Part shown: positions 19,361-32,905 of the stretch, in pieces
Layout: every line of letters starts with the position of its first letter
Numbering within the stretch: position 1 is the stretch's first letter
IMG/VR virus record: IMGVR_UViG_3300042350_004528
Coordinates: 186,001-250,000 of that record
Strand: one strand, 5' to 3'
DNA length: 64,000 nucleotides
Notes under the pieces: generated by a model
Told to the model about the DNA's origin: nothing
The model's database searches: none
What the model saw: the letters and a program-made list of their open reading frames with translations, nothing else
Program-made: the position numbers and the translations under genes

Positions 19361-19551
19361 GTAAGGTAGCAAAACTGGTTACAATATCCCTGATGACAAG
19401 AGTCATCGTGGATGAGAATGCAAGTGAGGAAGAGATTTTGAATTCTGCCAGACCTAAATTCATTCAGAAGGTTCAGGAAGAACTGAATGAAAACATCGAG
19501 GAAATTTGGTACGACAATGAATGTCCCTACGACCCTGAATTCGACAATTAA
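19357..19551 (+). CDS. Hypothetical protein, 64 aa
   Basis: ATGA-coupled. Confidence 0.78.
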   Translation: MSKVAKLVTISLMTRVIVDENASEEEILNSARPKFIQKVQEELNENIEEIWYDNECPYDPEFDN

Positions 19552-19605
19552 AATCTTTTTGTATTCAAATTTGCACATTAAAAAAATTATACTTATCTTT
19601 GCTGT

Positions 19606-19926
19606 ATGGAAAAATCAATGAGAACAGCGGCTGTATGTTCAAACTACGCCCTGAAAATAAAAGAAGCCCTTGTTCAAATGGCTGTTGAGGATAAACTCCC
19701 AATGGATATGACCACTTTGAATACGGATGAATTCGAAAACATTCTCGAACCGCTTGTTCGCAAGGTTGTCCGTGACGAGGACGAGAATGCAATCCCTGAG
19801 AGCATTCAGGTTGGTGTTTACTACTATGAGGATGATGAAACAGGGAAGCCTGTGTTTGATACTGATAGTATGATGGATGAATTCGAAAATGAGTTGAAAA
19901 AACTTGAAGACAAGTTTGCGAGTTAA
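19606..19926 (+). CDS. Acidic hypothetical protein, 106 aa
   Basis: Leaderless-type start; ends KFAS. Confidence 0.8.
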   Translation: MEKSMRTAAVCSNYALKIKEALVQMAVEDKLPMDMTTLNTDEFENILEPLVRKVVRDEDENAIPESIQVGVYYYEDDETGKPVFDTDSMMDEFENELKKLEDKFAS

Positions 19927-19955
19927 ATTAAATTCACTTATATTTGCATAACACA

Positions 19956-20258
19956 ATGACAAACTATACTGATTTCAATGAAGAGGTTGGCAAGATTCGG
20001 GTGAGGCTAGCCCAACAAACCGAAGCTTTACTTAAGCCCGCGATTCCGCCAGCCATTTACAACTGCAAGAACGAAGGCATTGCCATATCGACAGCAGAAG
20101 GTACGATGAAAGTTGAAACCATTGGTTACGACAACGGCGGAGTATTCGTTAAAACCGAAACAGGTGAGGTATGGGATTACATGGATTTGGACACTGATGA
20201 TATGGTCGCGATTTACGAGCATGTTTGGTACCAAATTAATTCCGCACCTATGAGGTGA
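19956..20258 (+). CDS. Hypothetical protein, 100 aa
   Basis: Start corrected to MTNYT. Confidence 0.8.
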   Translation: MTNYTDFNEEVGKIRVRLAQQTEALLKPAIPPAIYNCKNEGIAISTAEGTMKVETIGYDNGGVFVKTETGEVWDYMDLDTDDMVAIYEHVWYQINSAPMR

Positions 20259-20405
20259 GTCTTTGTGTGATGTTTTGTTTTGATGATGAAGAGGAGACCT
20301 AGTGTCTCCTTTTCTGATTATACCAGGATCAACAGCAAAAAAAGTTGATTTCAGATTTGCACATTAAATTTAATTCATTTATATTTGCATTCAAAACAAA
20401 ACGAA

Positions 20406-20621
20406 ATGGCTAAACCAAAATTTTACGAGTGTGTGATTTCATTTACATACGAAGCGGAGAACCCAACAGACGCCGCGAGGCAGTTTATCGCAAACATTCA
20501 GAACAATCCAAACTGGAATGTACTGGTGAAAGATTGTGAGAACTTTGAGAACACCTTTAATGTTGATACGGAAACAGGTGAGTGTGAAACCAATTCAATC
20601 GAGGATTATGACGACCTGTAA
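20406..20621 (+). CDS. Hypothetical protein, 71 aa
   Basis: Start corrected to MAKPKFY. Confidence 0.8.
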   Translation: MAKPKFYECVISFTYEAENPTDAARQFIANIQNNPNWNVLVKDCENFENTFNVDTETGECETNSIEDYDDL

Positions 20622-20820
20622 AGCCCTGACAGCACATATTGTTGAAGAAGGAAACCTGATCGACAGGTGGCCCTGTGATGTTAACGAAGAGAATGAGATG
20701 CAATCAAACGGGTCTCAGGAATTTCTTTATGAATATAACGGGAACAAGTACTGTGTCTGGATGGACTGGAACGACAATCCAATCCTACCTGGTGAAATTT
20801 TATCACCAATTCCTGAATAA
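20608..20820 (+). CDS. Hypothetical protein, 70 aa
   Basis: Start corrected to MTTCK. Confidence 0.7.
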   Translation: MTTCKALTAHIVEEGNLIDRWPCDVNEENEMQSNGSQEFLYEYNGNKYCVWMDWNDNPILPGEILSPIPE

Positions 20821-20875
20821 AATTTGCAGGTTAAAAAAATTATACTTATATTTGCATCATTAAATCAAAACAAAT

Positions 20876-21160
20876 ATGTCAAAGCCCACAGCAAAAGAAA
20901 CGGTAGAAACCGTAACCAATTACCTGAACAGTTTCTCGAGCAAAGAGAAGGAATTCATTGAGGAAATGAACAGGGAACATCGCACACTTCAACAGTCATT
21001 CACAAAACTATGTCTGGCATGGCTTGAGAACTGCGCCAATGAAGAATATCGTTTTGATGGAAGGAATGAAGCGAGTCACACTGTATCGAAGGAACTCGTT
21101 GAGAACTTCAAGTGGAACAAGGATGGTTTCAAACCATCTGAATTCTTACCCTGTATATAA
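20876..21160 (+). CDS. Hypothetical protein, 94 aa
   Basis: EHRTLQQSF..DGRNEAS. Confidence 0.85.
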   Translation: MSKPTAKETVETVTNYLNSFSSKEKEFIEEMNREHRTLQQSFTKLCLAWLENCANEEYRFDGRNEASHTVSKELVENFKWNKDGFKPSEFLPCI

Positions 21161-21193
21161 AAAAAAGAGGGGACTTTTACATCCCCTCATTTT

Positions 21194-21364
21194 TTATTGT
21201 ACCGAGTCTGTGGTTGTGGAAACATTCGTAGTGTCTACGCTTGTGGTATCGGTAACAACAGCGGTTGAGTCCGTAGCTGTTGTTGACTCGGTGGATTCCG
21301 ATCCGCAAGATACAACTGTCAACATTGAAGCGACAATTGCAAGTGTCATGAGAATTCTTTTCAT
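21194..21364 (-). CDS. Short Thr/Ser/Asp-rich lipoprotein, 56 aa
   Basis: Lipobox VVSC; four D-(S/T)-(T/V) sequons. Confidence 0.8.
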   Translation of the reverse strand: MKRILMTLAIVASMLTVVSCGSESTESTTATDSTAVVTDTTSVDTTNVSTTTDSVQ

Positions 21365-21470
21365 GTCCACAATATTAAACAAAAAATAGATAAATGTCAA
21401 GCAAATTAGACAAAAAAAAATTTGCAGGTTAAAAAAATTACATTTACATTTGTATTCAAAATCAAAAGCA

Positions 21471-21815
21471 ATGAAATATAAACAGCAAGCTCCAATTGAT
21501 GATTGGTCAGACATCGACAAGTGCATCAAGAATTCTGAAATCAACCTGAAACATTTACAGGACATTGACAAAGCTCAGGAAGCCAAAGGTGAACCCTTAC
21601 TTTACCGTTACTTTTACAGGCCTGTCGCTGACGGTCGAGCTTGGTATCAGGTGACGAAGGTTACATCTAGAACAGCTACCGTCACATGGTGCGCAGGGAT
21701 TTGTCTTGACGACTATGTTGATATGATGTTGGGTGAGGAAGCTACGATATCTCGCGGCATGATTGAGAACATGGTGAATGGAAGAATTGCACTTGAAAAA
21801 TTATTTGCACATTAA
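21471..21815 (+). CDS. Hypothetical protein, 114 aa
   Basis: PVADGRAWYQV; ends LFAH. Confidence 0.83.
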   Translation: MKYKQQAPIDDWSDIDKCIKNSEINLKHLQDIDKAQEAKGEPLLYRYFYRPVADGRAWYQVTKVTSRTATVTWCAGICLDDYVDMMLGEEATISRGMIENMVNGRIALEKLFAH

Positions 21816-21860
21816 ATTTTTTCCATTTATATTTGTATTCATAAATCAAAAACAAAATAT

Positions 21861-22484
21861 ATGCACAAAGGAGTAATCTTATTAGTAAAAGCGGATGACC
21901 GCGATGACGCCATTGGCCAAGCCAACGAGTTTCTTGACCACTATGGGGATGGCGATGTATGGGATTGGTTCGTAATCGGTGGCCGTTGGAGCGGTAACCT
22001 GAACACCCTATCGAAAACTTTCTACGAGAAAGCAAAGGTTCTTTTCGAACAAGCATATCCAAATGAGGATAGCCCATTCTTGTCAACCAAAATGGTTGAG
22101 GAGCAAGCACAGGGTTTGCAAGAGATTTGGGAAAGCATTGGCGGGAAAGGTCAGAACCCATATTCTCGCAGCAGTTATATCAGTGACGGATTTGAGGATG
22201 ATTGTCTCCCGTTGACTGATTGCATTCCCGTCATTCAGGATTGGAAGAAAGATATGGTGGCGGAGGCTGAAACCATTTGGAATAAAATGATTGAGGCCAA
22301 GAAAGATAGTGCGGACAAGTACGATATGTCAGGGTACTACGCAGGTATCTATCGTGACTTAAAGTATGATAATTTCTCTTTCGAGAGTAATGTCTACGAT
22401 GTCGTCAATCACACGAACGACCCCTCGCAGGCTTTGGAGAACCCCGAGCAGTGGTGGGCGGTTCAAATTGATATGCACAATTAA
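21861..22484 (+). CDS. Phage hypothetical protein, 207 aa
   Basis: WDWFVIGGRWSG..IDMHN. Confidence 0.87.
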   Translation: MHKGVILLVKADDRDDAIGQANEFLDHYGDGDVWDWFVIGGRWSGNLNTLSKTFYEKAKVLFEQAYPNEDSPFLSTKMVEEQAQGLQEIWESIGGKGQNPYSRSSYISDGFEDDCLPLTDCIPVIQDWKKDMVAEAETIWNKMIEAKKDSADKYDMSGYYAGIYRDLKYDNFSFESNVYDVVNHTNDPSQALENPEQWWAVQIDMHN

Positions 22485-22572
22485 TATTCCTCTTATCATT
22501 CCACAAAGGGGAGGTTTTTAAAATCTCCCTTTTTTTTTATCACATTTGTAAAATCAATTAATAACAGAGCAT

Positions 22573-22680
22573 ATGTCTAAGTCAGTAAAAGTAAAAATCA
22601 CGAAGAGTACATTCAAGTATGTAAGCAAACCAACAACTAAACAGGGCCGTGTGCCAAAACCCTCATCCAAAAAAAGATAG
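22573..22680 (+). CDS. 35-aa Lys-rich peptide
   Basis: MSKSVKVKITKSTFKYVSKPTTKQGRVPKPSSKKR. Confidence 0.55.
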   Translation: MSKSVKVKITKSTFKYVSKPTTKQGRVPKPSSKKR

Positions 22681-22740
22681 ATTCACATTTGCAAGTTAAA
22701 AAAATTATACTTATCTTTGTCCCAATCAAAACAAAATAAT

Positions 22741-22995
22741 ATGGAACTTTTAGTTGGAACCAACCTTGAGGTTATGAGTAGGACAATTTACATCGCCGTT
22801 GATGTACAATTTGACAAGAACGGTGAAACCTACGAGGCTAATCTCACCTGTTGTTTATCGGAAGATATAAACATTGGATTTGATTCCTGGGATATCACAA
22901 TTGCAAACGAGGAAGAACTTCCTGAGTTAACGGCGGAAGAAACTGAGCAACTTAAAGAATTTGCAAAAAAATATGCCCAAGTACTTGCAAATTAA
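22741..22995 (+). CDS. Hypothetical protein, 84 aa
   Basis: Start corrected to MELLV; ends VLAN. Confidence 0.8.
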   Translation: MELLVGTNLEVMSRTIYIAVDVQFDKNGETYEANLTCCLSEDINIGFDSWDITIANEEELPELTAEETEQLKEFAKKYAQVLAN

Positions 22996-23034
22996 ATTTA
23001 TTACACTTATATTTGTAACCTAAATCAAAACAAT

Positions 23035-23649
23035 ATGTCAAAAGTATTCAAAGTAACTTCAGGTACAATGGTGTGTTCCGACCCTTGTTACGAAATCCCG
23101 ACTTGGTGTCAGGGTATCGTGAGTAATGTGAAAAACGGAAATTGGGAAGCGGGTATTGAAACTTCCGATGAAGGCTCTTGGGGTGAGCGTATCGCTCGTC
23201 TTTGGGTTTACAACTTGGAAGCGGCTATCAAAGACCCAAGTATAGTTAAAGCCATTGAGAATGGTGGTGGACACGAAATGCCTTTCAGTGCGGGTGTTGA
23301 TAGTGGTCAGTTCGGTTTCTTCGACCACGCCAACTATCGCAAAGATGATAGTGCGAAAGATTTACCACAATACGACTTCGGTGGTGACTTTGGAATGGGT
23401 ACTAACGAGGGTGATGCTTGGTATGGTGCTTGTTGTCATTTAACACTTGGTGAAGAAAATTGGGGTGTCCTACCAAATGGTGTTGTTTCTTCTTCAGGAT
23501 ATGGTGATGGCTCTTATGCAGTCACAGGTATCAAGAACGATGAGGGTGAGTATGTTGCGTTCTGCATTGTCTTTATCGGTAACGATGATGAGGAGGATAA
23601 CGATGATTTGGATTGGGGTGATTGGAACGAAACTACCGATGAGGATTAA
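23035..23649 (+). CDS. DUF4241-like protein
   Basis: SDPCY, GVDSGQ, SSGYGDGSY. Confidence 0.72.
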   Translation: MSKVFKVTSGTMVCSDPCYEIPTWCQGIVSNVKNGNWEAGIETSDEGSWGERIARLWVYNLEAAIKDPSIVKAIENGGGHEMPFSAGVDSGQFGFFDHANYRKDDSAKDLPQYDFGGDFGMGTNEGDAWYGACCHLTLGEENWGVLPNGVVSSSGYGDGSYAVTGIKNDEGEYVAFCIVFIGNDDEEDNDDLDWGDWNETTDED

Positions 23650-23763
23650 ATTGGGTTTTTAGGTTGGAGCCTCCTGATCAATTCAGGGGGCTTTTTTTTT
23701 CTTAAAAAATTTGCATATTAAATTTATTTCATTTATCTTTGCATTCATAAAATCAAAAACAAA

Positions 23764-24342
23764 ATGAATATTTTACCAAAATCAATTACTGACCGAGTGT
23801 CAATCAAGAATGTGAAAGAAAACTTCGGACACGACTTGGGTGGTTTCTTCTGCGACATCTACTTCGACAACAAGAAAGTAGGTTACCTGAACAATGATGG
23901 TTGGGGTGGTTGCCCTGACATTCGTACCTATGGTTTCGATGCAAAGCACAAAGCGATGATGAAATCATTTGAGGACTTCCTGACCGAGCAGAACTTCGCC
24001 CAGTTTGTTGCTGATGATTACAACAAACCGCACCCGCAAATGCCCAATGGTAAGAATGATTGGGTTGCTGATGATTTCAGGTTTGACAGCCAAGTTGAAT
24101 TCCTTTGTGAACGCCTGAACTTTATGAAAAGTATTGAACGCCAAACAAAGAAAGCAATCCTTTATGGTAACCCTCGTTCAACCAATTACAAGATAGTATC
24201 TTGGAAAGGTGCAAAGACACTTGAAGATGTTGTGAAGAGTATCGGTAATGCTCGTTTCAAGGTTGTTGTTGATGGTATCAAAGCCAAACTTGTTGAGGGG
24301 GAAATGATTTACAACACAAACCTCGAAAAGTTTTTGCAATAA
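23764..24342 (+). CDS. Hypothetical protein, 192 aa
   Basis: NDGWGG motif. Confidence 0.87.
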   Translation: MNILPKSITDRVSIKNVKENFGHDLGGFFCDIYFDNKKVGYLNNDGWGGCPDIRTYGFDAKHKAMMKSFEDFLTEQNFAQFVADDYNKPHPQMPNGKNDWVADDFRFDSQVEFLCERLNFMKSIERQTKKAILYGNPRSTNYKIVSWKGAKTLEDVVKSIGNARFKVVVDGIKAKLVEGEMIYNTNLEKFLQ

Positions 24343-24398
24343 AATTTGCACATTAAATTTATTTCACTTATCTTTGTACCAACAAAATCAAAAAACAT

Positions 24399-25016
24399 AT
24401 GGGATATTCAACCGATTTCTTTGGCTCATTGTCTTTGAGCCGACCAGCGACCATCGTAGAGAAGAACTACTTGGATAAACTCGCTGACACTCGCAGAATG
24501 AAACGCGATGTTAACAAACTCATGGAACTCTACAAAGGGGAACATGGCAATCCATTTGCTAAAGACAAGAACAACCCTGACGATATCTATGGTTTCAAAG
24601 GGGAATACTTTGTTGGGGCAGATGGTTTCAAGGGTCAGAATGGCGATGATAGTGTTATCGACCACAACAGCGCCAGTGGCGAGATTGGATGGGGAGAATA
24701 CAAAGGCGATTGGGTTTTGCGTGATAAATTACAAACCGAACTCAACGCTGATAAAATCAAACAGCCAGGTCTTTGGTTGCAATGGGTGCTTAACGAGGAT
24801 GGTACTGAACTATCATGGGATGGTAACGAAAAGTTTTACCACTACACCGAATGGTTGCAGTATCTTATCGCCCATTTCTTTGAGCCATGGGGTATCAAAC
24901 TCAATGGCGAGATTGAATGGGTTGGCGAGGACAGCAATGACCGAGGAAAGATTGTTGTGTCCGACAACCATGTTGAAATTCTTGACGCTGTTATAGGATA
25001 TCAGAAGAGGGGTTAA
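24399..25016 (+). CDS. Phage hypothetical protein, 205 aa
   Basis: MGYSTDF, QPGLWLQW, WDGNEKFY. Confidence 0.87.
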   Translation: MGYSTDFFGSLSLSRPATIVEKNYLDKLADTRRMKRDVNKLMELYKGEHGNPFAKDKNNPDDIYGFKGEYFVGADGFKGQNGDDSVIDHNSASGEIGWGEYKGDWVLRDKLQTELNADKIKQPGLWLQWVLNEDGTELSWDGNEKFYHYTEWLQYLIAHFFEPWGIKLNGEIEWVGEDSNDRGKIVVSDNHVEILDAVIGYQKRG

Positions 25017-25123
25017 TCCCCTCTTTTCCTGAATTCTGGATCGGATCAAAAAAAAATGTAAAAAAGTTTGCGTATTAAATTTATTCCACTTATCTTTGTA
25101 TCATAATTAAAAACCAAAATAAA

Positions 25124-25936
25124 ATGTACGAACTCGAAAAAATCAAAGAACTTGCACCTGCGGCTTTCCGTATGCCTGAAGACGGTGCTCAGGACGGTGT
25201 GTCAAAGCACTACCAATTCATGACCACCGCTGAAATCATTGACGGTCTTGGTGGAATGGGTTGGGATGTTCACTCGGCTATGCAACAAAAGTCGAAGAAG
25301 AACCCTGAAACCACAAAGCACATGTTGCGCTTCCGTAATGACAACTACGGTTCACTGGGTGTTAAGGGGAATGTTCCTGAAATCCTGTTAGTGAATTCTC
25401 ACGACCGCACAACCTCATTGAACTTTCATGTGGGTATCTTCCGCATCATCTGTTCGAACGGCTTGGTGGTTGCTGATGAAACATTCAACAAGTTCCGTAT
25501 TCGTCACATGGGTACAACATTCGATGAGGTTAAGGGATTAATCAACAACATCACTGAGAACCTACCAACTGTGTTCAATACAATCAACCGCTTCGAGGGT
25601 GTGATTATGAGTGAGGAGGCACAAACCGAGTTCGCTATGCGAGCATTCGCTATCCGCTTCCCTGAGTACATCAACCCAAAGACAAACGCTTTGGACACCA
25701 AGAAAGTAATGAAGAATGTATCAGTTGATGAAATCCTGAAAGCAGTTCGTCCTGAGGACAATGGCCCTGACTTGTGGAGAGTTTACAACCGAGTTCAGGA
25801 GAAACTCATCAAGGGTGGCTTCCAACATCAAGGCGAGGGGCAGAAGCCTCGTGCTTCACGCCCTATCAGCAACATTCGTATGAATGTCCTGATTAACAAA
25901 GGCCTGTGGAACTTGGCGGAGGAGTTCGCTAACTAA
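25124..25936 (+). CDS. DUF932/DUF945 family protein
   Basis: KHMLRFR, NSHD, GIFRIICSNG, LWRVYNRVQE. Confidence 0.85.
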   Translation: MYELEKIKELAPAAFRMPEDGAQDGVSKHYQFMTTAEIIDGLGGMGWDVHSAMQQKSKKNPETTKHMLRFRNDNYGSLGVKGNVPEILLVNSHDRTTSLNFHVGIFRIICSNGLVVADETFNKFRIRHMGTTFDEVKGLINNITENLPTVFNTINRFEGVIMSEEAQTEFAMRAFAIRFPEYINPKTNALDTKKVMKNVSVDEILKAVRPEDNGPDLWRVYNRVQEKLIKGGFQHQGEGQKPRASRPISNIRMNVLINKGLWNLAEEFAN

Positions 25937-26037
25937 CTCACAATACACTTGAAAGAAAGGGGGAAGAAATTCCCTCTTTTTTTTTGCACATTAAATTTAA
26001 TTTACTTATCTTTGTTATCGAAATCAAAAACAATAAT

Positions 26038-26607
26038 ATGAAGTTACTTAATTTTGTGATGGTCGCCAAACACCTGACAGGTGACAGCGAAGTTTATTTC
26101 TTTCCTACAAAGGAGGAAGCAAGAACATTCTACAACAACAGAGTTAAACCGCTGTTGGATATTTGTATGAAGAACGAATTGGAGGAAGATGAGGCGTACT
26201 CATTCGGACAAACCAAAGATTGTGTTCGTTTCGATTGTGGTTACGATGAGGAACTTGATGCGATGCTTAACGAGTGTAATCATTACTATCGTGTGGACAG
26301 CGTTGAAGTTCCTGAAAATGTTACACACTATGTGGCTGACTTTTCCGAGTGGGTTGATGAGAGTGTTATCGAGTTCCACACCGAACAACAGGCAAAGGAA
26401 GTTTGGAACGATAAGATTGATGAGGAAATCAGGTTGGCTTCCGAGTATCATGGGATTGAGATTAGCAGACATCACCAAGAAACTTGGGAAGATAAATCAG
26501 GTATGACCTTGTTTCAGGAAACACATTACAGCGATATGTATTCCGATGCTTACTTTGGTCATTCAATGGATATGACTTGGACATTCAGGATTGGACAAAT
26601 AAATTAA
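26038..26607 (+). CDS. Hypothetical protein, 189 aa
   Basis: Start corrected to MKLLN. Confidence 0.83.
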   Translation: MKLLNFVMVAKHLTGDSEVYFFPTKEEARTFYNNRVKPLLDICMKNELEEDEAYSFGQTKDCVRFDCGYDEELDAMLNECNHYYRVDSVEVPENVTHYVADFSEWVDESVIEFHTEQQAKEVWNDKIDEEIRLASEYHGIEISRHHQETWEDKSGMTLFQETHYSDMYSDAYFGHSMDMTWTFRIGQIN

Positions 26608-26611
26608 TCTT

Positions 26612-26839
26612 ATGGCGATAAAAATCATTTACTACTCGGAGGTTATAGATAACTGGGGTAGAACAGAAAGTTCAATGAAAGGTGATATCATCTTCGCGGC
26701 CCTGAACAATGTTGAGGACTGGACTGACGATATGATGTTCGAGGGTGATGACGGTCGCAAGTATTCAATAGATGAGCTTGCAGGTAAAGAAGTTTGTGTA
26801 CCAGACATCGGGATATTCACCGTACCAGAAGAAGAATAA
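26612..26839 (+). CDS. Hypothetical protein, 75 aa
   Basis: ORF track. Confidence 0.78.
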   Translation: MAIKIIYYSEVIDNWGRTESSMKGDIIFAALNNVEDWTDDMMFEGDDGRKYSIDELAGKEVCVPDIGIFTVPEEE

Positions 26840-26896
26840 TTAACGGGGCTTAAAAGCCCCTTTATTTTTTTATCTGGGACGTTATATTTATCATGG

Positions 26897-27379
26897 ATGG
26901 TGAAGTCCCAGATTTTAAATGAGAGATCTTTTGATATAACAGACGGTGAACGATATTTAATTGTCGTGATCACCCCAGATAGATCGTACTCAGTTTTCAC
27001 CAGAAAGTACCAGAGCAAACCAGTTGTCTCTGTGGAATTCAAAGAAGCAAAACTTTATAAGGAGCTGAAGACAGCTCAGAATGTTGTGAAGGAAATCTTC
27101 CAGAACAATGAACACTACCAGGAATCTGTAATAAAGATATTCCAGGTGAAGGATCTATTCGAACCCAGATATTTTGTACAGTATATTAAAAAAGCTTACA
27201 TGAATTCTCCTGAGCTTAAGTGTTACATCGACTGGTACGTGATCGGCGAGAACCAGGTTGATACTTATCTGGATTACAGCGAAGCTCAAAAACATCTGGA
27301 CAAATACAAACGCGATCTACTTGAATTCTATTACAGCCAGATCATGAACATCAGGAGCTTCGACTTAAAAAAAATATAA
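26897..27379 (+). CDS. Hypothetical protein, 160 aa
   Basis: Preceded by TATTTAT rather than the array promoter. Confidence 0.8.
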   Translation: MVKSQILNERSFDITDGERYLIVVITPDRSYSVFTRKYQSKPVVSVEFKEAKLYKELKTAQNVVKEIFQNNEHYQESVIKIFQVKDLFEPRYFVQYIKKAYMNSPELKCYIDWYVIGENQVDTYLDYSEAQKHLDKYKRDLLEFYYSQIMNIRSFDLKKI

Positions 27380-27435
27380 AAAAAAACGGCTCCATTTCTG
27401 GAACCGTCTCTTCACCACTAAATCAAAAACAAAAA

Positions 27436-27702
27436 TCAATACTGGTAGTATGTGTATTCAATTGTGTCCCCCACCCTGTAACGGGCATGTTGAGGATCAA
27501 CTGTAACTGGAGCTGTGCTGTCCCAGAATTCATATCGGTAGCGCTTCTTGTAATTCAGTGTTGTTGGATCGTACTGTTCGATCGTGTCAACTTTCTTAAT
27601 CACATGTGGCACCACATGAATTGACTTCGGTGGTCTCTGGACACACCCTGTCACCAGGACAGTGAATACAAATATTAGTTTACGCACCTTTGGTAAATAC
27701 AT
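27436..27702 (-). CDS. Putative lipoprotein (start uncertain)
   Basis: LIFVFTVLVTGC lipobox. Confidence 0.65.
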   Translation of the reverse strand: MYLPKVRKLIFVFTVLVTGCVQRPPKSIHVVPHVIKKVDTIEQYDPTTLNYKKRYRYEFWDSTAPVTVDPQHARYRVGDTIEYTYYQY

Positions 27703-27913
27703 CTGGGTTTTCAAAATCAGTTTCAGTATCCAGAAACATGAATGAATCCTCCAACTCCTCATCGGTGAGTTTAACATCTTCCGACAAAGAATTCAGAAAG
27801 TCCATTGCTTCCCGTTTGCTGTTGAAATACTTGTAGTCTGTGTTGTCCTCATTCATAAGGTACTCCAAACCATTTAACGATATGCCCTCAATGGGTCTTC
27901 CAATTATTATCAT
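27680..27913 (-). CDS. Hypothetical protein, 77 aa
   Basis: GRPIEGISLNGLEYL; leaderless-type start. Confidence 0.82.
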   Translation of the reverse strand: MIIIGRPIEGISLNGLEYLMNEDNTDYKYFNSKREAMDFLNSLSEDVKLTDEELEDSFMFLDTETDFENPDVFTKGA

Positions 27914-27991
27914 ATGACAAAGGTAATTTAAATTTATTTAATATGCAAGAAACTGGGGAAGTTTTTTTCTCCCCCAGTTAATTTTATTACA

Positions 27992-28837
27992 TTATTCCCA
28001 AGGTGTATCAAAGTTATCGAATGGGTTTTCTGGGAAGCAAGAGTTCTCATCATTCCATTCTTCTTCCGAAATTACATTTCCGTCCTCACCAACATAAACT
28101 CTTTGTTCAACATTGTAGTTATATACAACGCCATCCAAAACATATTCTGGTTCACCCTCCGCTAACATAAGTTCACCATCCTCGCTGTAAGCACAACCCG
28201 CGAACCAGTTTCCAGTTTCCATAAACACCAGTTTGAAGTTCAAGTTCGGAAACATTTTGATAACTTTTCCCAACCAGTTGATTGGTGGCGACCAGGCGGA
28301 GTTGAAGTTAATTGTAATATAGTTTTCGTTATCTGTATCGAAACCCATTTCCTCTGACGAGCAATCCCACTTTGTTCCCCAGTTCATAACATTCCAGTCG
28401 TACCAGTTGTCAGTCCCATACTCTTCAATAAGAGCCTCTCGCTTCTCTTCTGTACCATTGGCACATTCAATTAGTTCTGGAATTTCAATTGGTATCTTTG
28501 CTTCATTCAATTGGTTGTTGATGAAGTCCCTGTCGGTTTTGTCTGTGGTCTCCAGAAGTTTTTTCTCCAGATCAGCGATCAACTCTTGTTGTTTCTCGAT
28601 ACGATTTTTTGCGTGGTTCACATCCCACTCGTTCACCCATTCACAATCACGAGGTGGTGATATGGTTCTGGAAAGTGGTTCTGGTGTCGGTAAGTAGTTC
28701 GACATTCTCCAGACAAGTTCTGTTTCACCTGTTTTGCTGTAACGCACAGGTTCTTCGGTAATTCCCATTGCAAGGAATTGTTTGAATTCTTTGGTATCAC
28801 CCGATACCTCTAAACGATTTTCGCACCAGTTTGGCAT
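27992..28837 (-). CDS. YubB/DUF1281 ferredoxin-like domain protein
   Basis: MPNWCEN, WYDW..NWGTKW, FNSAWSPP. Confidence 0.82.
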   Translation of the reverse strand: MPNWCENRLEVSGDTKEFKQFLAMGITEEPVRYSKTGETELVWRMSNYLPTPEPLSRTISPPRDCEWVNEWDVNHAKNRIEKQQELIADLEKKLLETTDKTDRDFINNQLNEAKIPIEIPELIECANGTEEKREALIEEYGTDNWYDWNVMNWGTKWDCSSEEMGFDTDNENYITINFNSAWSPPINWLGKVIKMFPNLNFKLVFMETGNWFAGCAYSEDGELMLAEGEPEYVLDGVVYNYNVEQRVYVGEDGNVISEEEWNDENSCFPENPFDNFDTPWE

Positions 28838-28979
28838 AGTATATTGTTTTTGATTTCGAGAGCAAATATACACCATATATTTTTAACTCGCAAACTTTAT
28901 CACAAAAAACTTTTTTCATTTTTATTTGCACATTAAATTTATTGCACTTATCTTTGTGTCGAAATCAAAAATAAAAATC

Positions 28980-29723
28980 ATGTTTAATCTAGGGTACACG
29001 TACAAGAAGCCTACCACACTGTTTGGTACGCAGAATGCAAAGACAAAGAAAGGTGAAAAACTGGGGTATACAACCTATATCCTGTATATGTCACCAGAAA
29101 AACAAAACACGCTTGGCAAGAACATTTGCCCGAAAGCCACAGCAGGCTGTTCGAAGTCATGTCTCTTCACAGCGGGTCGTGGCAAGTTTAGCAATGTCAT
29201 GAAAGGTCGTCTGAATAAGACTGAATACTTTCTTCGTGACAAGGTGAACTTCATGGACGATGTTGTTAAGGAAATTAAAAAGGGTATTAAAAAACATGGT
29301 GCGGGTGCAATGTGCGTTCGTCTCAATGGTACCTCTGATATTCCTTACGAGAACATTCCAGTGGGTGGTTTTAAAAATGTCATGGAAATGTTTCCTGATG
29401 TGCAATTTTACGATTACACAAAGATCTATTCAAGGTTGACAAAGCAATTGCCTGCGAACTATCACCTTACCTTTTCCAGGGCGGAGACAGAGGACAACCA
29501 ACGCGAAGCGGACAAAGCACTCGCACTTGGTTTCAATGTCGCTGTTGTTTTCGCTGTTAAGGACGAGACAGAACTTCCCGCTGAATACAACAATGCAAAG
29601 GTTATCAATGGTGACGAGCACGATCTTACTTTCTTACATGGCAATGGTGTTGTCGTGGGGTTGAAAGCAAAGGGTGAAGCAAAGAAAGATGATACAGGTT
29701 TCGTAGTAAGGGGTTGTAACTAA
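28980..29723 (+). CDS. Gp88-like phage protein (Cys cluster, radical-SAM-like)
   Basis: CPKATAGCSKSCL, RLNGTSD, FYDYTK, NYHLTFS, GLKAKG. Confidence 0.78.
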   Translation: MFNLGYTYKKPTTLFGTQNAKTKKGEKLGYTTYILYMSPEKQNTLGKNICPKATAGCSKSCLFTAGRGKFSNVMKGRLNKTEYFLRDKVNFMDDVVKEIKKGIKKHGAGAMCVRLNGTSDIPYENIPVGGFKNVMEMFPDVQFYDYTKIYSRLTKQLPANYHLTFSRAETEDNQREADKALALGFNVAVVFAVKDETELPAEYNNAKVINGDEHDLTFLHGNGVVVGLKAKGEAKKDDTGFVVRGCN

Positions 29724-29784
29724 CCCCTTATTTTTTTTTGCATTCAGACTTGCAAGTTAAATTAAATTCATATACCTTTGTCAT

Positions 29785-30102
29785 ATGAAAGCAAAACAAA
29801 ACAATTATCCAAAGTTTATCATCCGTTGGAACGGTCGATTCCATAAGGGTCTGATAACCGAAGACTTCGTCTTCTACTGTAACTACCAGGAAGGAGATGA
29901 TAACGGCAATGTTGAGATGTATCGCAGGGTTGAATCTAACCCGCATGACAGGGACAACAGCGGGCTAGAATTGGTATCGAACAATTACTTTGCTAGCGTT
30001 GGTCTCTTCGAAGCGCTCGAGGCGGGCGTCTGGGAATACATCTCACCAACCATGAAACTGAATTATAAACTAGCAAAAGAAGCGGGACAATTCGATGAGT
30101 AA
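29785..30102 (+). CDS. Hypothetical protein, 105 aa
   Basis: Leaderless-type start. Confidence 0.8.
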   Translation: MKAKQNNYPKFIIRWNGRFHKGLITEDFVFYCNYQEGDDNGNVEMYRRVESNPHDRDNSGLELVSNNYFASVGLFEALEAGVWEYISPTMKLNYKLAKEAGQFDE

Positions 30103-30406
30103 GAAAGAAAGAAAAATATACGAGACCTCTGTAATATACAGAGGGTACCAGACATTTAAACTGTGCTGGGCCACCTCATATGCTGAAGCTGCCAGGATCT
30201 TGGATGTGGCCCCTAGTTACCTTAAGAATTACGGCCTGTCTTATAAACGCGATCGGGATTTTGACTTCGAGGGTTGTTATGGGTATATCGATTCAGGTGA
30301 GATCATCTTTGGTGAACCAGGACGACCTGATCTGATGAGAAAACTTATGCCATGGGCGGAGTTGACGGAGATCGTTGATACTTATATTAAAGAGAAATAC
30401 GAATGA
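30095..30406 (+). CDS. Hypothetical protein, 103 aa
   Basis: Coupled ORF. Confidence 0.75.
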   Translation: MSKKERKIYETSVIYRGYQTFKLCWATSYAEAARILDVAPSYLKNYGLSYKRDRDFDFEGCYGYIDSGEIIFGEPGRPDLMRKLMPWAELTEIVDTYIKEKYE

Positions 30407-30768
30407 GACCAGAATTCAAGATATACAGGAATCTACACAGAGACTGTTTCAGTGTGATGAGATGGAACCAGGAGAAGAGAGGGTACCGTCTGTATCAGCA
30501 TGTCAAGGATCTAGAAGCTTACGGCGTAACGTTCAGGGTATCTCAGGCTGGACGGGCCAGGGTTCTGGAGACGAAGCAAAAGAATGTACATGCATTCGTA
30601 TGCTGCCAAGAATTCAAGCTTGCTTCTGGGGCCGCGAACCTGGGTGAGGAGATCTACTACAATCCATACAAGATGGAAACGTTCAGGATCAAGAGCTCGG
30701 ACGAATCGATTCTGAATGCAGATTCGGTTATCATGACGAATAATAAATGTTATTTAAATGTGATCTGA
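30403..30768 (+). CDS. Phage hypothetical protein, 121 aa
   Basis: YRNLH..FSV, KNVHAFV, YNPY. Confidence 0.82.
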   Translation: MRPEFKIYRNLHRDCFSVMRWNQEKRGYRLYQHVKDLEAYGVTFRVSQAGRARVLETKQKNVHAFVCCQEFKLASGAANLGEEIYYNPYKMETFRIKSSDESILNADSVIMTNNKCYLNVI

Positions 30769-30772
30769 ATTC

Positions 30773-31324
30773 ATGGGCGGAGATGAGAGAAGCGCGATAG
30801 AAGTGATCGCTGAATTCACGTCACCATTTGAGGATTCACTTAACGTGTTAATCCTAGGTGATCATATAGATGATCTTGAGGCTGCTGAAGTAAAGGCGGC
30901 GTTCGATCGAACCAGGAATGAATTCCTGAGTCTGCCATCGGTGGACGAGGAGAAGATGGCCCCGATCAAATATATTAAAATTAATACATCCGAATTTTTC
31001 AGGGGGAAGATCAGTAATAAAATTAAGAAGGAACCCTGTGTTGTATATCTGGATCACGAGCTCAGCAAAAATGCTTTGAACATCCTCACCAATAATAACA
31101 GTGAGGTGGATGATCTGGAGGAAATGCTTCTGGAGAAATATCTTTTCGGGATCAACCAGGAAAAATTTATTCTGGATCTCACCAGCTGTCTGGATGAAAG
31201 GATCGAACTTCTCATGAGTGCCATGGACGCCAGAGCTGGGGAATTCAATTATGTTCTGGTGGAAAAGTATCTGGCGATCTGGATATATGCGCTTGACGAA
31301 TTCGCCCCATTTCAGTTCGATTAA
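30773..31324 (+). CDS. Hypothetical protein, 183 aa
   Basis: ORF track. Confidence 0.75.
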   Translation: MGGDERSAIEVIAEFTSPFEDSLNVLILGDHIDDLEAAEVKAAFDRTRNEFLSLPSVDEEKMAPIKYIKINTSEFFRGKISNKIKKEPCVVYLDHELSKNALNILTNNNSEVDDLEEMLLEKYLFGINQEKFILDLTSCLDERIELLMSAMDARAGEFNYVLVEKYLAIWIYALDEFAPFQFD

Positions 31325-31386
31325 AAAAAAGATAAAAAAAGTTTCAAAAAAACTTGCATAATAAAAAAAGTTGTATTACATTTGTA

Positions 31387-31470
31387 GTCCTTAAGAGTTC
31401 AGGCCTGGGAGGCAACCCTTTCTCTCTGTTTTGTTTTTGATTTCAAAAAGTCCTCCCAGGTTCTGTTCTC
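31387..31470 (+). ncRNA. Putative small RNA 4 (hairpin with anti-leader loop)
   Basis: Array-type promoter 31353-31384 with no ORF; CCUGGGAGG(31404-12)/CCUCCCAGG(31452-60) stem; loop UUUUGUUUUUGAUUUC. Confidence 0.62.
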
Positions 31471-31609
31471 GAATTCAAGTTTAAGTTTCTACTAGAATTC
31501 AACCCCGTATAATTTTTAGAATTCATATTGCTGGATCTTCCAGAATTCATATCCGTAACTTTTTTAGAATTCATATATAAATAAAAAAGGTGAACCCTTT
31601 TAGAATTCA
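31471..31609. repeat. GAATTCA repeats at 24-bp period
   Basis: GAATTCA at 31471, 31495, 31519, 31543, 31567, then 31603. Confidence 0.9.
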
Positions 31610-31634
31610 CCTTTCAGTTTTTTTATGTATTCAC

Positions 31635-31892
31635 TTATTCGTCATCCGCTTCTTTCTTGCGTCTGGTCTTTCTGGTTGGTAAACCTCTTTTCTCACGTAT
31701 CCTGTCCCTGAGTTCCATCACCTTCAGGATGGCTGTGATCACCGCGATGAAAAGACCGAGGATCACACCGATCAATTGTAGGAGATCTGTTGCACTCATG
31801 GTGATTGATAACATTGATGATAATATTCCGTATTCAGGTTTTTTAGTTAGTGTATCCGTTAATTGGGTGATGAGTGTGTCCTTCATTTTCAA
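31635..31892 (-). CDS. Holin-like small membrane protein
   Basis: TM helix followed by very basic tail; ACTATTTAT upstream. Confidence 0.5.
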   Translation of the reverse strand: MKMKDTLITQLTDTLTKKPEYGILSSMLSITMSATDLLQLIGVILGLFIAVITAILKVMELRDRIREKRGLPTRKTRRKKEADDE

Positions 31893-32037
31893 TACTGTTT
31901 TTGTTTATTTTTTTGTATACAAATAAATAGTATGAATGAATAGAAAACGCCCGTTGTTAACTCGAATACATTATTTTTTTTTAAAAAAATTTGCACATTA
32001 AATTTTAATGTGTTATCTTTGATTAAATTAAAATAAT

Positions 32038-32331
32038 ATGAATGCAATAAATACAGCCTATACATTGGGTTTGGTCGCCATGTATTTTATCATGGGCGGA
32101 GAATTCACATTCTGGGTGTTCATGACCTCGGTCTTGATCGCACTGATTCCACTGACAACTTCGAACCTGTTATTCGCGACCCCGATCGTGGTTCTGATCT
32201 GGTGTTTCTTTTTCACCAGCAGTACAGTTTACGATTCCGACTTCGCGTGGTTATGCATCCTGTATGCACCCTTCCATTACACCTCATTCATATCCCATGT
32301 CATAGACGCCATCGAGGGCATTTTCGATTAA
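32038..32331 (+). CDS. Multi-TM membrane protein, 97 aa
   Basis: Hydrophobic; last array promoter 31990-32021. Confidence 0.78.
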   Translation: MNAINTAYTLGLVAMYFIMGGEFTFWVFMTSVLIALIPLTTSNLLFATPIVVLIWCFFFTSSTVYDSDFAWLCILYAPFHYTSFISHVIDAIEGIFD

Positions 32332-32409
32332 ATTTACGCCGTTTTTTTAATAATTTAAAAAAAATATATCGAAAACTGTCGAGGGGCTCAAATTTTTTTC
32401 ACTTGTTCC

Positions 32410-32462
32410 TGGGTGGGAAATGGGATTTTGTGGGGGTAAGTGGGGGATTGTGGGAAATAGTG
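32410..32462 (+). repeat. TGGG repeats at 10-bp period
   Basis: TGGG at 32421, 32431, 32441, 32451, plus 32410 and 32414. Confidence 0.85.
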
Positions 32463-32608
32463 TAAGTAACTGATTATCAGGTAATTCAGTGACTGTCAGT
32501 GAGTTATCTGAATGCACTCATTTTCAGTCAGTTGCGGGTATGTGTGTTTCTCGGCAGAATTCACATGGGATCCTGGGCAATATAATGTAAAATGAATGCA
32601 TTTTAAGG

Positions 32609-32905
32609 CTATTTAAGCGCACTTCGTGCTGCTGTGGTAGCCTCTATCATTTTATTGTATTCAATCCACTGAAGGTATGTTTTCTCCTCGAATACTCTGG
32701 TGTATTTATTACAGTTTTTCACTCCGTACTTCCATACAACCTTCATGATATTTTCATCCTCAGCCAGAGAGCTGTACCATGTGAGTATTCTTTTTTTACC
32801 CTTCATGTATACAAACTCATCTCCTTCTTTCAGACTGTGAATTCCATTCTCAAGCTCCTGAAGAATGAATACACCTTTCATATGATTCACTCTTATTGTA
32901 TTCAC
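32609..32905 (-). CDS. Hypothetical protein, 98 aa
   Basis: Last gene of the - strand block. Confidence 0.75.
   Translation of the reverse strand: MNTIRVNHMKGVFILQELENGIHSLKEGDEFVYMKGKKRILTWYSSLAEDENIMKVVWKYGVKNCNKYTRVFEEKTYLQWIEYNKMIEATTAARSALK

What the first reader, a model, noticed from the sequence alone, without database searches (positions are those of the whole stretch)
32332..32608. Non-coding hub with 10-bp-periodic GTGGG boxes (MraZ-box-like) and IHF-like sites where the two halves converge
Seen: TGGG at 32421, 32431, 32441 and 32451 (one helical turn apart; six G-tracts in all), then three related dyads CTGATTATCAG (32470), GTGACTGTCAG (32489) and CTCATTTTCAG (32517), each followed by N4-TT. 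Established: MraZ binds TGGG/GTGG direct repeats at 10-bp period upstream of the dcw cluster, and the IHF consensus is WATCARN4TTR. Inference: a nucleoprotein site such as a terminal-repeat boundary or packaging site, a decoy for host MraZ that affects division genes, or a G-quadruplex.
Basis: partly seen in the sequence, partly recalled or inferred. Interest (0 to 1): 0.66.

Follow-up and report, generated by a model that had tools for sequence, protein, structure and literature searches.

The report
MraZ-operator look-alike in a huge phage
A 299-kb lake-water phage of Bacteroidota-type hosts carries, between two converging genes, a conserved non-coding module whose core is a near-perfect copy of the DNA site that the bacterial cell-division regulator MraZ binds, so the phage probably recruits or soaks up that host protein.

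Summary
The 10-bp-phased G boxes are at the stated coordinates and are unique in the 298,833-bp genome.

What is conserved in five diverged relatives is an array of 3-6 GTG(G/T) boxes at an exact 10-bp period (window 32430-32469, weaker box at 32420). This is the published architecture of MraZ-binding repeats.

- **Pattern test:** a pattern fitted only to the phage copies retrieved at least 120 bacterial loci. In 91-107 of them an mraZ-like reading frame lies directly downstream; 10 of 10 checked are Pfam MraZ.
- **Independent matrix test:** a matrix built from an unbiased sample of Bacteroidota-phylum mraZ promoters scores this site 40 bits. The next unrelated site in the genome scores 12.

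The phage has no MraZ or AbrB-type gene, so host MraZ is the likely binder. The array sits in a ~280-bp module under purifying selection, with an AT tract and a GGCTCAAATT block upstream, a TTTCTCGGCAGAATTCAC core downstream, and a plus-strand hairpin followed by a T run.

Whether it controls a small phage transcript or titrates MraZ is unresolved. A packaging or terminal site, a conserved G-quadruplex, and the second and third "IHF dyads" are not supported. No binding or transcript data exist.

The parts
32038..32331 (+). 97-aa predicted membrane protein gene. It is the syntenic left neighbour of the element in every relative.
   Evidence: No Pfam or PHROG family. A Bacteroidota-type promoter (TTTG ... 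TATCTTTG) lies at about 31990-32020.
32329..32336 (+). Conserved palindromic TAAATTTA, a 7-of-8 match to the Bacteroidota -7 promoter motif TAnnTTTG. It is a candidate -7 element for a + strand transcript. This is inference.
   Evidence: Invariant columns T1 A2 A3. T5 T6 T7 A8 of alignment A4; motif scan. In the relatives it lies beyond the stop codon, so it is not kept as part of the gene.
32342..32369 (.). AT-only tract of 28 bp. It could be a UP-element-like or easily melted or bent stretch.
   Evidence: It belongs to the best-conserved 5' block (identity 0.67-0.85, against 0.38-0.60 at third codon positions).
32385..32402 (+). Conserved block GGCTCAAATT(C/T)TTTTCAC. Its function is unknown. 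In relative L015 the TTCTTTTAC part is expanded to four tandem copies.
   Evidence: GGCTCAAATT is invariant in all 7 homologues plus partial L018. It is single-copy in the genome.
32410..32417 (+). Two extra TGGG tracts. They are not conserved.
   Evidence: Changed to AGGGTGTA in close variant L020/L021 and absent in the other relatives.
32420..32469 (+). The MraZ-operator-like array: five 10-bp units starting at 32420 (ATGG), 32430, 32440, 32450 (GTGG) and 32460 (GTGT). The spacers are A/T-rich.
   Evidence: - Sequence and period.
- Conserved box letters with variable spacers.
- Matrix from host mraZ promoters gives 40.2 bits (3 units) and 41.8 bits (4 units), top of the whole genome.
- The phage-fitted pattern retrieves mraZ operators in bacteria.
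32470..32487 (+). It holds the invariant skeleton CTG.T...CA.....TT, which is IHF-like (TATCAG-N4-TT).
   Evidence: Invariant columns C142 T143 G144 T146 C150 A151 T157 T158. The dyad symmetry itself is lost in L007, L014 and L019.
32488..32535 (.).
   Evidence: The alignment block that contains it has identity 0.40-0.63 between relatives, no better than third codon positions. The imperfect inverted repeat 32490-32504/32516-32530 is only partly kept.
32536..32579 (+). Conserved core: GGGTATG-N4-TTTCTCGGCAGAATTCAC-N4-GATCC-N3-GGCA.
   Evidence: Invariant TAT-N5-TTTCTCGG. Identity 0.51-0.78. Unique in the genome. No conserved small reading frame was seen on reading the homologous sequences.
32576..32610 (+). 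Hairpin followed by a T run on the + strand (intrinsic-terminator-like). It is weak in this phage.
   Evidence: Homologous position in relatives: L014 -15.5, L015 -19.2, L019 -19.8 and L007 -12.5 kcal/mol, each followed by (C/U)AUUUU. Stem sequences differ while the hairpin is kept. Window copy: -6.8 kcal/mol, no better than shuffles.
32609..32905 (-). 98-aa protein gene of unknown function. It is the syntenic right neighbour.
   Evidence: No family; the atlas search was uninformative.

Best explanation
The core of the feature (32420-32469) is an operator for the host's cell-division regulator MraZ. It consists of four to five GTG(G/T) boxes as direct repeats, exactly one helical turn apart, so that adjacent subunits of an opened MraZ ring can each insert into the major groove on one face of the DNA.

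The phage encodes no MraZ, so the protein would come from the host, which the expression signals mark as Bacteroidota-type. The operator is embedded in a conserved ~280-bp non-coding module: a -7-like TAAATTTA, an AT tract, a GGCTCAAATT block, the boxes, a TTTCTCGGCAGAATTCAC core, and a + strand hairpin with a T run.

My preferred mechanism is inferred, not shown. The module is a short + strand transcription unit, either its own RNA or the long 3' tail of the 97-aa gene's mRNA. Bound MraZ would gate or block passage through the boxes, tying the output to the host's division state.

In parallel or instead, replicated phage genomes offer many high-affinity sites that draw MraZ away from the host dcw promoter.

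- **Shown:** the sequence architecture, its uniqueness, its conservation, and its equivalence to real mraZ operators.
- **Inferred:** binding, transcription, and any effect on the host.
For: 1. **Architecture matches the literature.** MraZ contacts GTG(G/T) boxes separated by six spacer nucleotides, three boxes in most bacteria and four in some Mycoplasma (PMC12957436). In B. subtilis the triple repeat is unique to the mra promoter (bioRxiv 10.1101/2022.02.09.479790). The Mollicutes site is a series of AAAGTG[T/G] repeats (PMC8475190).
2. **The phage-fitted pattern finds mraZ operators.** The pattern GTGGGNNWWWGTGGGGGWWWGTGG fits all phage homologues. A reading frame with the MraZ signature D.KGR follows within 400 nt in 91, or 107 with a looser signature. 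All 10 tested frames are Pfam MraZ. Many are Bacteroidota: Algoriphagus, Prevotella, Sphingobacterium.
3. **Independent test.**
   - 60 of 61 evenly drawn genomes of that phylum have MraZ.
   - 28 of 29 distinct upstream regions have two or more boxes at 10-bp spacing.
   - Their unit matrix puts window 32430 first in the whole genome: 40.2 bits against 11.9 for the next unrelated site (genome mean -43.7, sd 11).
   - Phage relatives score 30-41 bits. Real operators have a leave-one-out median of 24.
4. **Conservation.** Five diverged homologues keep 3-6 boxes and the period. Spacers, box order and box number change. Identity in the boxes and flanks exceeds that of third codon positions.
5. 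**No phage-borne binder found.** The phage has no MraZ or AbrB-type domain.
6. **Host type.** TAnnTTTG lies upstream of 62 of 276 reading frames against 8% expected, and SD-like sequences precede 1 of 276.
7. **Terminator-like hairpin.** A + strand hairpin with a T run is kept at the module's end with different stem sequences.
Against: - No protein-binding, transcript or infection data exist, and the host is unknown.
- The array is not in front of any gene. Genuine operators overlap the mraZ promoter.
- No canonical TAnnTTTG lies near the boxes on either strand, so the promoter part of the model is weak.
- The hairpin is weak in this phage itself.
- The 642-kb relative LR756502.1 has no such array, so it is a feature of one sub-family.
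- Similar G-rich phased repeats occur in viral contigs for other reasons. A control pattern with a 12-bp period gave 17 stretches against 28, so occurrence in phages in general is not shown to be enriched.
- An undetected phage protein could be the real binder.
Confidence: 0.6

Rival explanations
1. The phased boxes are iterons or a centromere-like site for a phage-encoded protein or another host protein. That is, a replication origin (AT tract next to direct repeats) or a partition site, and the likeness to MraZ boxes is convergent.
For: - An AT-only 28-bp tract lies 50 bp from the direct repeats.
- The whole module is conserved, not just the boxes.
- Most phage genes nearby have no known function.
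- In another phage family (L165/L166) similar boxes sit beside DnaA boxes.
Against: - The boxes match the MraZ operator in letters, spacing, number and A/T spacers, at the top of the range of real operators.
- No initiator, ParA/ParB-like or AbrB-like gene was found next to it.
- A better origin candidate, an inverted pair of perfect DnaA boxes, lies at G000 185742-185766.
- There is no strand-skew turn specific to this point beyond the change of gene strand.
Confidence: 0.15
2. The element acts as RNA: a small RNA or 3'UTR whose G-rich repeats fold (RNA G-quadruplex, or pairing with the upstream U-rich CAC block) or bind an RNA-binding protein. The DNA-level likeness to MraZ boxes is then irrelevant.
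For: - A + strand hairpin with a U run ends the module in all homologues.
- Single-sequence folds are more stable than shuffles: z = -2.7 on + and -3.9 on -.
- UUUUUUUCAC can pair with GUGGGGG through G-U pairs.
Against: - RNAalifold gives a weak consensus (-12.5 kcal/mol) with an unfavourable covariation term (+2.3). The long-range pairs are invariant or change on one side only, and the hairpin pairs that change on both sides are broken in 1-3 of the 7 sequences.
- There is no Rfam match in the element.
- Four G3 tracts are not conserved.
- A strict 10-nt period with invariant GTG(G/T) is what a DNA major-groove reader needs, not an RNA helix.
Confidence: 0.12
3. It is a packaging (pac/cos) site or the edge of a terminal repeat, with the phased repeats bound by small terminase and an IHF-like bend beside them.
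For: Phased short repeats with a bend site are typical of pac/cos regions (SPP1 and P1 pac, lambda cosB; from general knowledge). The site lies at a module boundary.
Against: - Contigs from many samples read through it without a break: three IMG/VR contigs and a 516-nt Logan contig over 32216-32731.
- The assembly closes elsewhere, with a 145-bp end overlap.
- The terminase large subunit lies at G000 122720-123463, 95 kb away.
- No terminus signal could be obtained.
Confidence: 0.03
4. It is a DNA G-quadruplex that stalls polymerases or marks the convergence point.
For: This is one of only two G-strand canonical quadruplex motifs in the genome. The other also lies in a convergent intergenic region.
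Against: The relatives keep the boxes but have only 2-3 G3 tracts (L015 two; L007, L014 and L019 three), so a three-tetrad quadruplex is not what is conserved.
Confidence: 0.05

Closest known systems
MraZ-binding repeats (MraZ boxes) of the bacterial dcw/mra promoter
   Same: - Direct repeats of GTG(G/T) with six spacer nucleotides (10-bp period).
- 3-6 boxes with A/T-rich spacers.
- A single occurrence per genome.
- The letters are almost the same as in Sphingobacterium, Algoriphagus and Prevotella operators, including a fourth GTGT box.
   Different: - It lies in a phage, with no mraZ or dcw genes downstream.
- It sits between converging genes rather than over a recognisable promoter.
- It has more boxes (4-6) than the usual three.
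- It is flanked by phage-specific conserved blocks that show no similarity to host promoter flanks; nhmmer alignments stop at the boxes.
Titration ('decoy') sites for host regulators on replicating elements, for example datA for DnaA or plasmid iterons
   Same: A cluster of high-affinity sites for a low-abundance host DNA-binding protein, carried on DNA that multiplies in the cell. This comparison rests on general knowledge.
   Different: No evidence here of titration. There is a single array per genome, and the conserved flanks and terminator-like hairpin suggest more than a passive sink.
lambda cosB / P1 pac type packaging sites with an IHF bend
   Same: Short phased repeats next to an IHF-like motif (TATCAG-N4-TT at 32475-32486).
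   Different: No terminus, no nearby terminase, and the repeats match a different, known protein's site.

Membership tests
MraZ operator (MraZ-binding repeats) | Three or more GTG(G/T) boxes as direct repeats separated by six nucleotides | tested here: met
   GTGG at 32430, 32440 and 32450, and GTGT at 32460. Relatives have 3-6 boxes at the same period. The definition comes from PMC12957436.
MraZ operator (MraZ-binding repeats) | Sequence indistinguishable from genuine operators of the candidate host phylum | tested here: met
   A matrix from 29 unbiased mraZ upstream regions scores the site 40.2 bits, top of the genome. Real operators have a leave-one-out median of 24.2 and a maximum of 42.
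MraZ operator (MraZ-binding repeats) | Lies in the promoter region directly upstream of mraZ / the dcw cluster | tested here: not met
   There is no MraZ gene in the phage. The array lies between the 3' ends of two converging genes.
MraZ operator (MraZ-binding repeats) | Bound by MraZ in a box-dependent way | not testable with these tools
   Needs EMSA, footprinting or ChIP. The complex-prediction tool takes no DNA.
MraZ operator (MraZ-binding repeats) | The cell in which it acts makes MraZ | tested here: inconclusive
   60 of 61 sampled genomes of the Bacteroidota phylum encode MraZ, and the phage's expression signals are Bacteroidota-type. The actual host is not identified.
IHF binding site (WATCAANNNNTTR) | Match to the consensus, kept in relatives | tested here: inconclusive
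   The first site, TATCAG-GTAA-TTC (32475-32487), keeps TCAR-N4-TT in all relatives, and L015 is a perfect match. The second and third sites are mismatched and not conserved. Whether the host has an IHF with this consensus is unknown.
Canonical G-quadruplex motif (four G3+ tracts, loops 1-7) | Motif present and conserved | tested here: not met
   Present in the window at G000 218411-218454, but the relatives have only two or three G3 tracts.
Phage pac/cos site or terminal-repeat boundary | Physical genome end or coverage step; usually near the terminase genes | tested here: inconclusive
   No raw-read coverage was available. Contigs read through. The terminase gene is 95 kb away.
Iteron-type replication origin | Direct repeats beside an AT-rich unwinding tract, with a cognate initiator gene | tested here: inconclusive
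   An AT tract and repeats are present. No initiator-like gene was recognised beside them. Origin activity cannot be tested here.

The most novel reading that the evidence does not exclude
Phages plug directly into the bacterial division regulator MraZ by carrying its operator. In this huge-phage family a conserved 4-6-box array would act either as a sensor that couples a phage RNA to host division state, or as a multiplying decoy that strips MraZ from the dcw promoter and reprogrammes division during a long infection.

Similar arrays seen in about nine other unrelated viral-contig families hint that the trick may be widespread. One sits right after a -10-like TATAAT box, and one sits beside DnaA boxes.
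Probability: 0.2. Interest if true: 0.8.

Novelty: new variant of a known kind. Interest (0 to 1): 0.6.

Why it matters
MraZ is one of the most widely conserved bacterial transcription factors, and its physiological role is still poorly understood. In the full-text searches made here I found no report of a virus carrying its operator; those searches cover a limited library.

A conserved, top-scoring MraZ site in a huge phage would give a natural handle on what MraZ senses. It would also be a new example of how large phages take over host cell-cycle control.

The site is a host-range clue as well, because its box flavour matches Sphingobacteriales and Cytophagales-type operators. The claim is cheap to test: one gel shift with any Bacteroidota MraZ.

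Tried and rejected
- **Read-based terminus test.** The 20 holder runs listed are kept as assembled contigs. The one raw-read DNA run gave about one read and the RNA run none on the element, so there was no terminus, start or strand information.
- **Rfam.** Nothing in the element at gathering or E<=1.
- **Conserved RNA structure.** RNAalifold gave no convincing support.
- **Similar DNA in GenBank phages.** None found.
- **Exact core motif in viral contigs.** It found only the same family plus two chance coding hits. The metagenome scan added one close variant plus three chance hits.
- **Capture from a host dcw promoter.** nhmmer of the phage alignment against 120 host loci aligns only the boxes. 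L104 (Sphingobacterium) alone also shares GCTCAAATTCT. So a recent capture with flanks is not shown.
- **Remnant mraZ start.**
  - TTTCTCGGC-A-GAATTC resembles the codons for (M)FLGEF with one extra base.
  - The same 8-mer begins mraZ in only 2 of 120 host loci, and no MraZ profile match exists in the phage.
  - I keep this as an unproven curiosity.
- **Small conserved peptide in the core.** Rejected. The start codon is absent in L015 and the frame lengths differ (sequences).
- **General enrichment of such arrays in phages.** A 12-bp-period control gave 17 stretches against 28, mostly long perfect tandem repeats. Enrichment is therefore not claimed.
- **Neighbouring proteins.** No Pfam or PHROG family for the flanking small proteins, and the atlas search of the 98-aa protein was uninformative.
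- **The 642-kb relative LR756502.1.** It has no array.

Full report
**Setting.** The window is bases 186001-250000 of a single 298,833-bp contig. Its first 145 bases recur at the end, which indicates a circular assembly. The genome is 34% G+C.

- Gene content is that of a huge phage: NAMPT, PRPP synthetase, RNA ligase, GP88 and L5-gp82-like proteins. The nearest GenBank record is a 642-kb uncultured phage.
- All public runs that hold it are lake or freshwater metagenomes.
- Its expression signals are Bacteroidota-type. TAnnTTTG lies 10-40 nt upstream of 62 of 276 long reading frames, against 8% expected. Shine-Dalgarno-like sequences precede 1 of 276.

**The observation.** The finding's region (32332-32608) is the gap between a + strand 97-aa membrane-protein gene ending at 32331 and a - strand 98-aa gene ending at 32609.

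- Three TGGG at 10-bp spacing occur nowhere else in the genome.
- Three or four GTG[GT] boxes at 10-bp spacing occur only here. Simulated genomes give 0.15 and 0.0.

**Relatives.** The neighbouring 97-aa protein has five further clusters at 66-79% identity. Their contigs keep the synteny: GP88, L5-gp82-like, a ~180-aa gene, an 85-aa gene on the other strand, the 97-aa gene, a gap, then the ~98-aa gene. A metagenome scan added a close variant. The gap is homologous in all of them (alignments A3, A4).

*What is conserved:*
- TAAATTTA;
- an AT-only tract;
- GGCTCAAATT(C/T)TTT;
- an array of GTG(G/T) boxes at an exact 10-bp period, with 3 boxes in L015, 4 in L014, 4-5 in the window and L019, and 6 in L007;
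- the skeleton CTG.T...CA.....TT;
- TCAG-N11-TAT-N5-TTTCTCGG(C/T)(A/G)GAATTCA;
- GATC(C/A);
- a + strand hairpin followed by (C/U)AUUUU.

*What is not conserved:*
- the two upstream TGGG (32410, 32414);
- the dyad symmetry of the three 'IHF-like' sites;
- four G3 tracts.

Pairwise identity in the 5' block (0.67-0.85), the boxes (0.59-0.78) and the core (0.51-0.78) exceeds that of third codon positions in the neighbouring gene (0.38-0.60). The middle block, which holds dyads two and three, does not (0.40-0.63). Within the array the box letters are invariant, while spacers, box order and box number change. That is the signature of a protein reading one face of the helix.

**Identity of the boxes.** The literature defines MraZ sites as follows:
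- three GTGG[A/T]G repeats in B. subtilis, unique in that genome;
- AAAGTG[T/G] repeats in Mollicutes.

I made two tests.

*Test 1: a phage-fitted pattern.*
- A pattern that fits every phage homologue and nothing else by design (GTGGGNNWWWGTGGGGGWWWGTGG) was scanned over one genome per prokaryotic species.
- In 91 loci (strict signature) or 107 loci (loose signature) a reading frame with the MraZ signature starts within 400 nt downstream.
- Ten of ten checked are Pfam MraZ.
- Many are Bacteroidota. Sphingobacterium operators are close to the phage array letter for letter, including a fourth GTGT box.

*Test 2: a matrix independent of the phage.*
- I drew 61 genomes evenly from the phylum of one of those hits. 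60 encode MraZ.
- Of 29 distinct upstream regions, 28 have at least two boxes at 10-bp spacing and 12 have at least three.
- A 10-bp unit matrix built from them (consensus GTGGGGAAAA) was scanned over both strands of the whole phage genome. It puts window 32430 first, with 40.2 bits for three units and 41.8 bits for four. The next unrelated sites score 11.9 and 6.4. The genome mean is -43.7 with sd 11.
- The phage relatives score 30-41 bits. Genuine operators have a leave-one-out median of 24 and a maximum of 42.

The phage array is therefore as good an MraZ operator as the best real ones. The phage itself has no MraZ or AbrB/MazE-type domain, so the natural binder is host MraZ.

**What the module does.** This part is inferred.

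- *Conserved flanks.* They argue that the array is not a bare binding site.
- *Evidence for + strand transcription.* A hairpin with a U run on the + strand ends the module in every homologue. The stem sequences differ: GC-rich in L014, L015 and L019, another sequence in L007, AU-rich and weak in the window. On the - strand no U run follows it, from my reading of the L019 and L015 sequences. So + strand transcription probably reaches this point.
- *Where that transcription starts.* It could start at a -7-like TAAATTTA at the module's start, or it could continue from the 97-aa gene.
- *Position of the boxes.* Either way they lie inside the transcribed stretch. In many non-Bacteroidota mra promoters seen here the boxes follow the -10 element (contexts).
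- *No canonical promoter.* No TAnnTTTG lies next to the boxes.

I therefore rank the mechanisms in this order:
- (a) MraZ gating a short phage transcript;
- (b) titration of MraZ by replicated phage genomes;
- (c) a roadblock that insulates the converging transcription units.

None of these is shown.

**Rivals.**
- *Packaging site or terminal-repeat edge.* Contigs read through the site. The assembly closes elsewhere. The only terminase-like gene is 95 kb away. The read-start test was impossible.
- *G-quadruplex.* The motif is real in this phage, one of two on the G strand of the genome, but it is not conserved.
- *Structured RNA.* There is no Rfam hit and no convincing covariation support.
- *Origin or partition site for an unknown protein.* This cannot be excluded, but it requires the match to MraZ operators to be coincidence.

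**Limits.**
- The host is unidentified.
- Nothing shows binding or transcription.
- Only five diverged homologues exist.
- Similar G-rich phased repeats turn up in viral contigs with a shifted period as well (17 stretches against 28). I therefore do not claim that phages in general are enriched for MraZ arrays, although several unrelated viral contigs carry operator-like arrays in non-coding DNA.

**Verdict.**
- The packaging, G-quadruplex and triple-IHF readings are not supported.
- This is a known kind of site, an MraZ operator, in a new setting: a conserved, gene-less module of a huge phage.

Noticed in passing
window 31460-31620: The previous gap holds five exact AGAATTCA at 24- and 36-nt spacing (31494-31602), plus looser GAATTCA copies from 31468. 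A 14-bp-stem terminator-like hairpin lies on the - strand (31615-31585). There is a sub-threshold Rfam match to Termite-leu RNA (31537-31618, - strand, 29.9 bits against a cut-off of 51). The element's conserved core also contains CAGAATTCAC.
   Followed up: partly
window 19439-32556 (G000 205439-218556): 16 of the genome's 21 AGAATTCA octamers fall in this 13-kb + strand module, which is also richer in G+C (about 40% against 34%). The module may have a separate origin.
   Followed up: no
G000:C1:185500-185830 (170-500 bases before the window starts): The genome's only other G-strand quadruplex motif (185650-185684) lies in another convergent gap, with C-rich/G-rich hairpins. It is followed by an inverted pair of perfect DnaA boxes (TTATCCACA at 185742, TGTGGATAA at 185758) and a third partial box. 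The genome has eight perfect DnaA boxes, against about two expected from its size (my own estimate). This is a candidate replication origin that would use host DnaA.
   Followed up: partly
G000:C1:140001-155000: A 15-kb stretch at 47% G+C in a 34% genome, with C-rich 9-nt-period repeats (CCCGAAGTT-like) at about 153.6-153.9 kb. It is probably a large repetitive gene or a foreign insert.
   Followed up: no
L015:5351-5400: In this relative the TTCTTTTAC part of the GGCTCAAATT block is expanded to four tandem ~10-nt copies, while the box array has one unit fewer. The two phased arrays may compensate for each other.
   Followed up: no
L015:5929-6645; L007:5030-5490: The relatives differ just beyond the 98-aa gene. 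L015 has an HNH/NUMOD4 homing endonuclease there. L007 shows several tRNA-like 3' ends on the - strand.
   Followed up: no
L145, L150, L162; L147, L148, L167; L158, L165, L166; L156, L160, L168: Unrelated viral contigs carry 3-4-box MraZ-operator-like arrays in non-coding DNA without an mraZ gene.
- One family has the boxes five bases after a TATAAT, as in bacterial mra promoters.
- Another has them directly beside three DnaA boxes and is conserved between two diverged contigs.
   Followed up: partly
L169-L185: Long, near-perfect 12-nt tandem arrays of GTGGGGGATTCC-like units occur in many viral contigs, including giant-virus bins. They were found with the period-shifted control. Their nature is unknown.
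   Followed up: no
window 32547-32564: TTTCTCGGC-A-GAATTC reads like the codons for FLG-EF, the usual start of MraZ (MFLGEF...), with one extra base, and it is preceded by GTG in this phage. It could be a relic of a captured mraZ 5' end. Support is thin: the 8-mer starts mraZ in 2 of 120 host loci, and there is no profile match.
   Followed up: partly
G000:C1:1-145 and 298688-298833: The contig's ends overlap by 145 bases, which points to a circular assembly, although the source database classes the record as linear.
   Followed up: no
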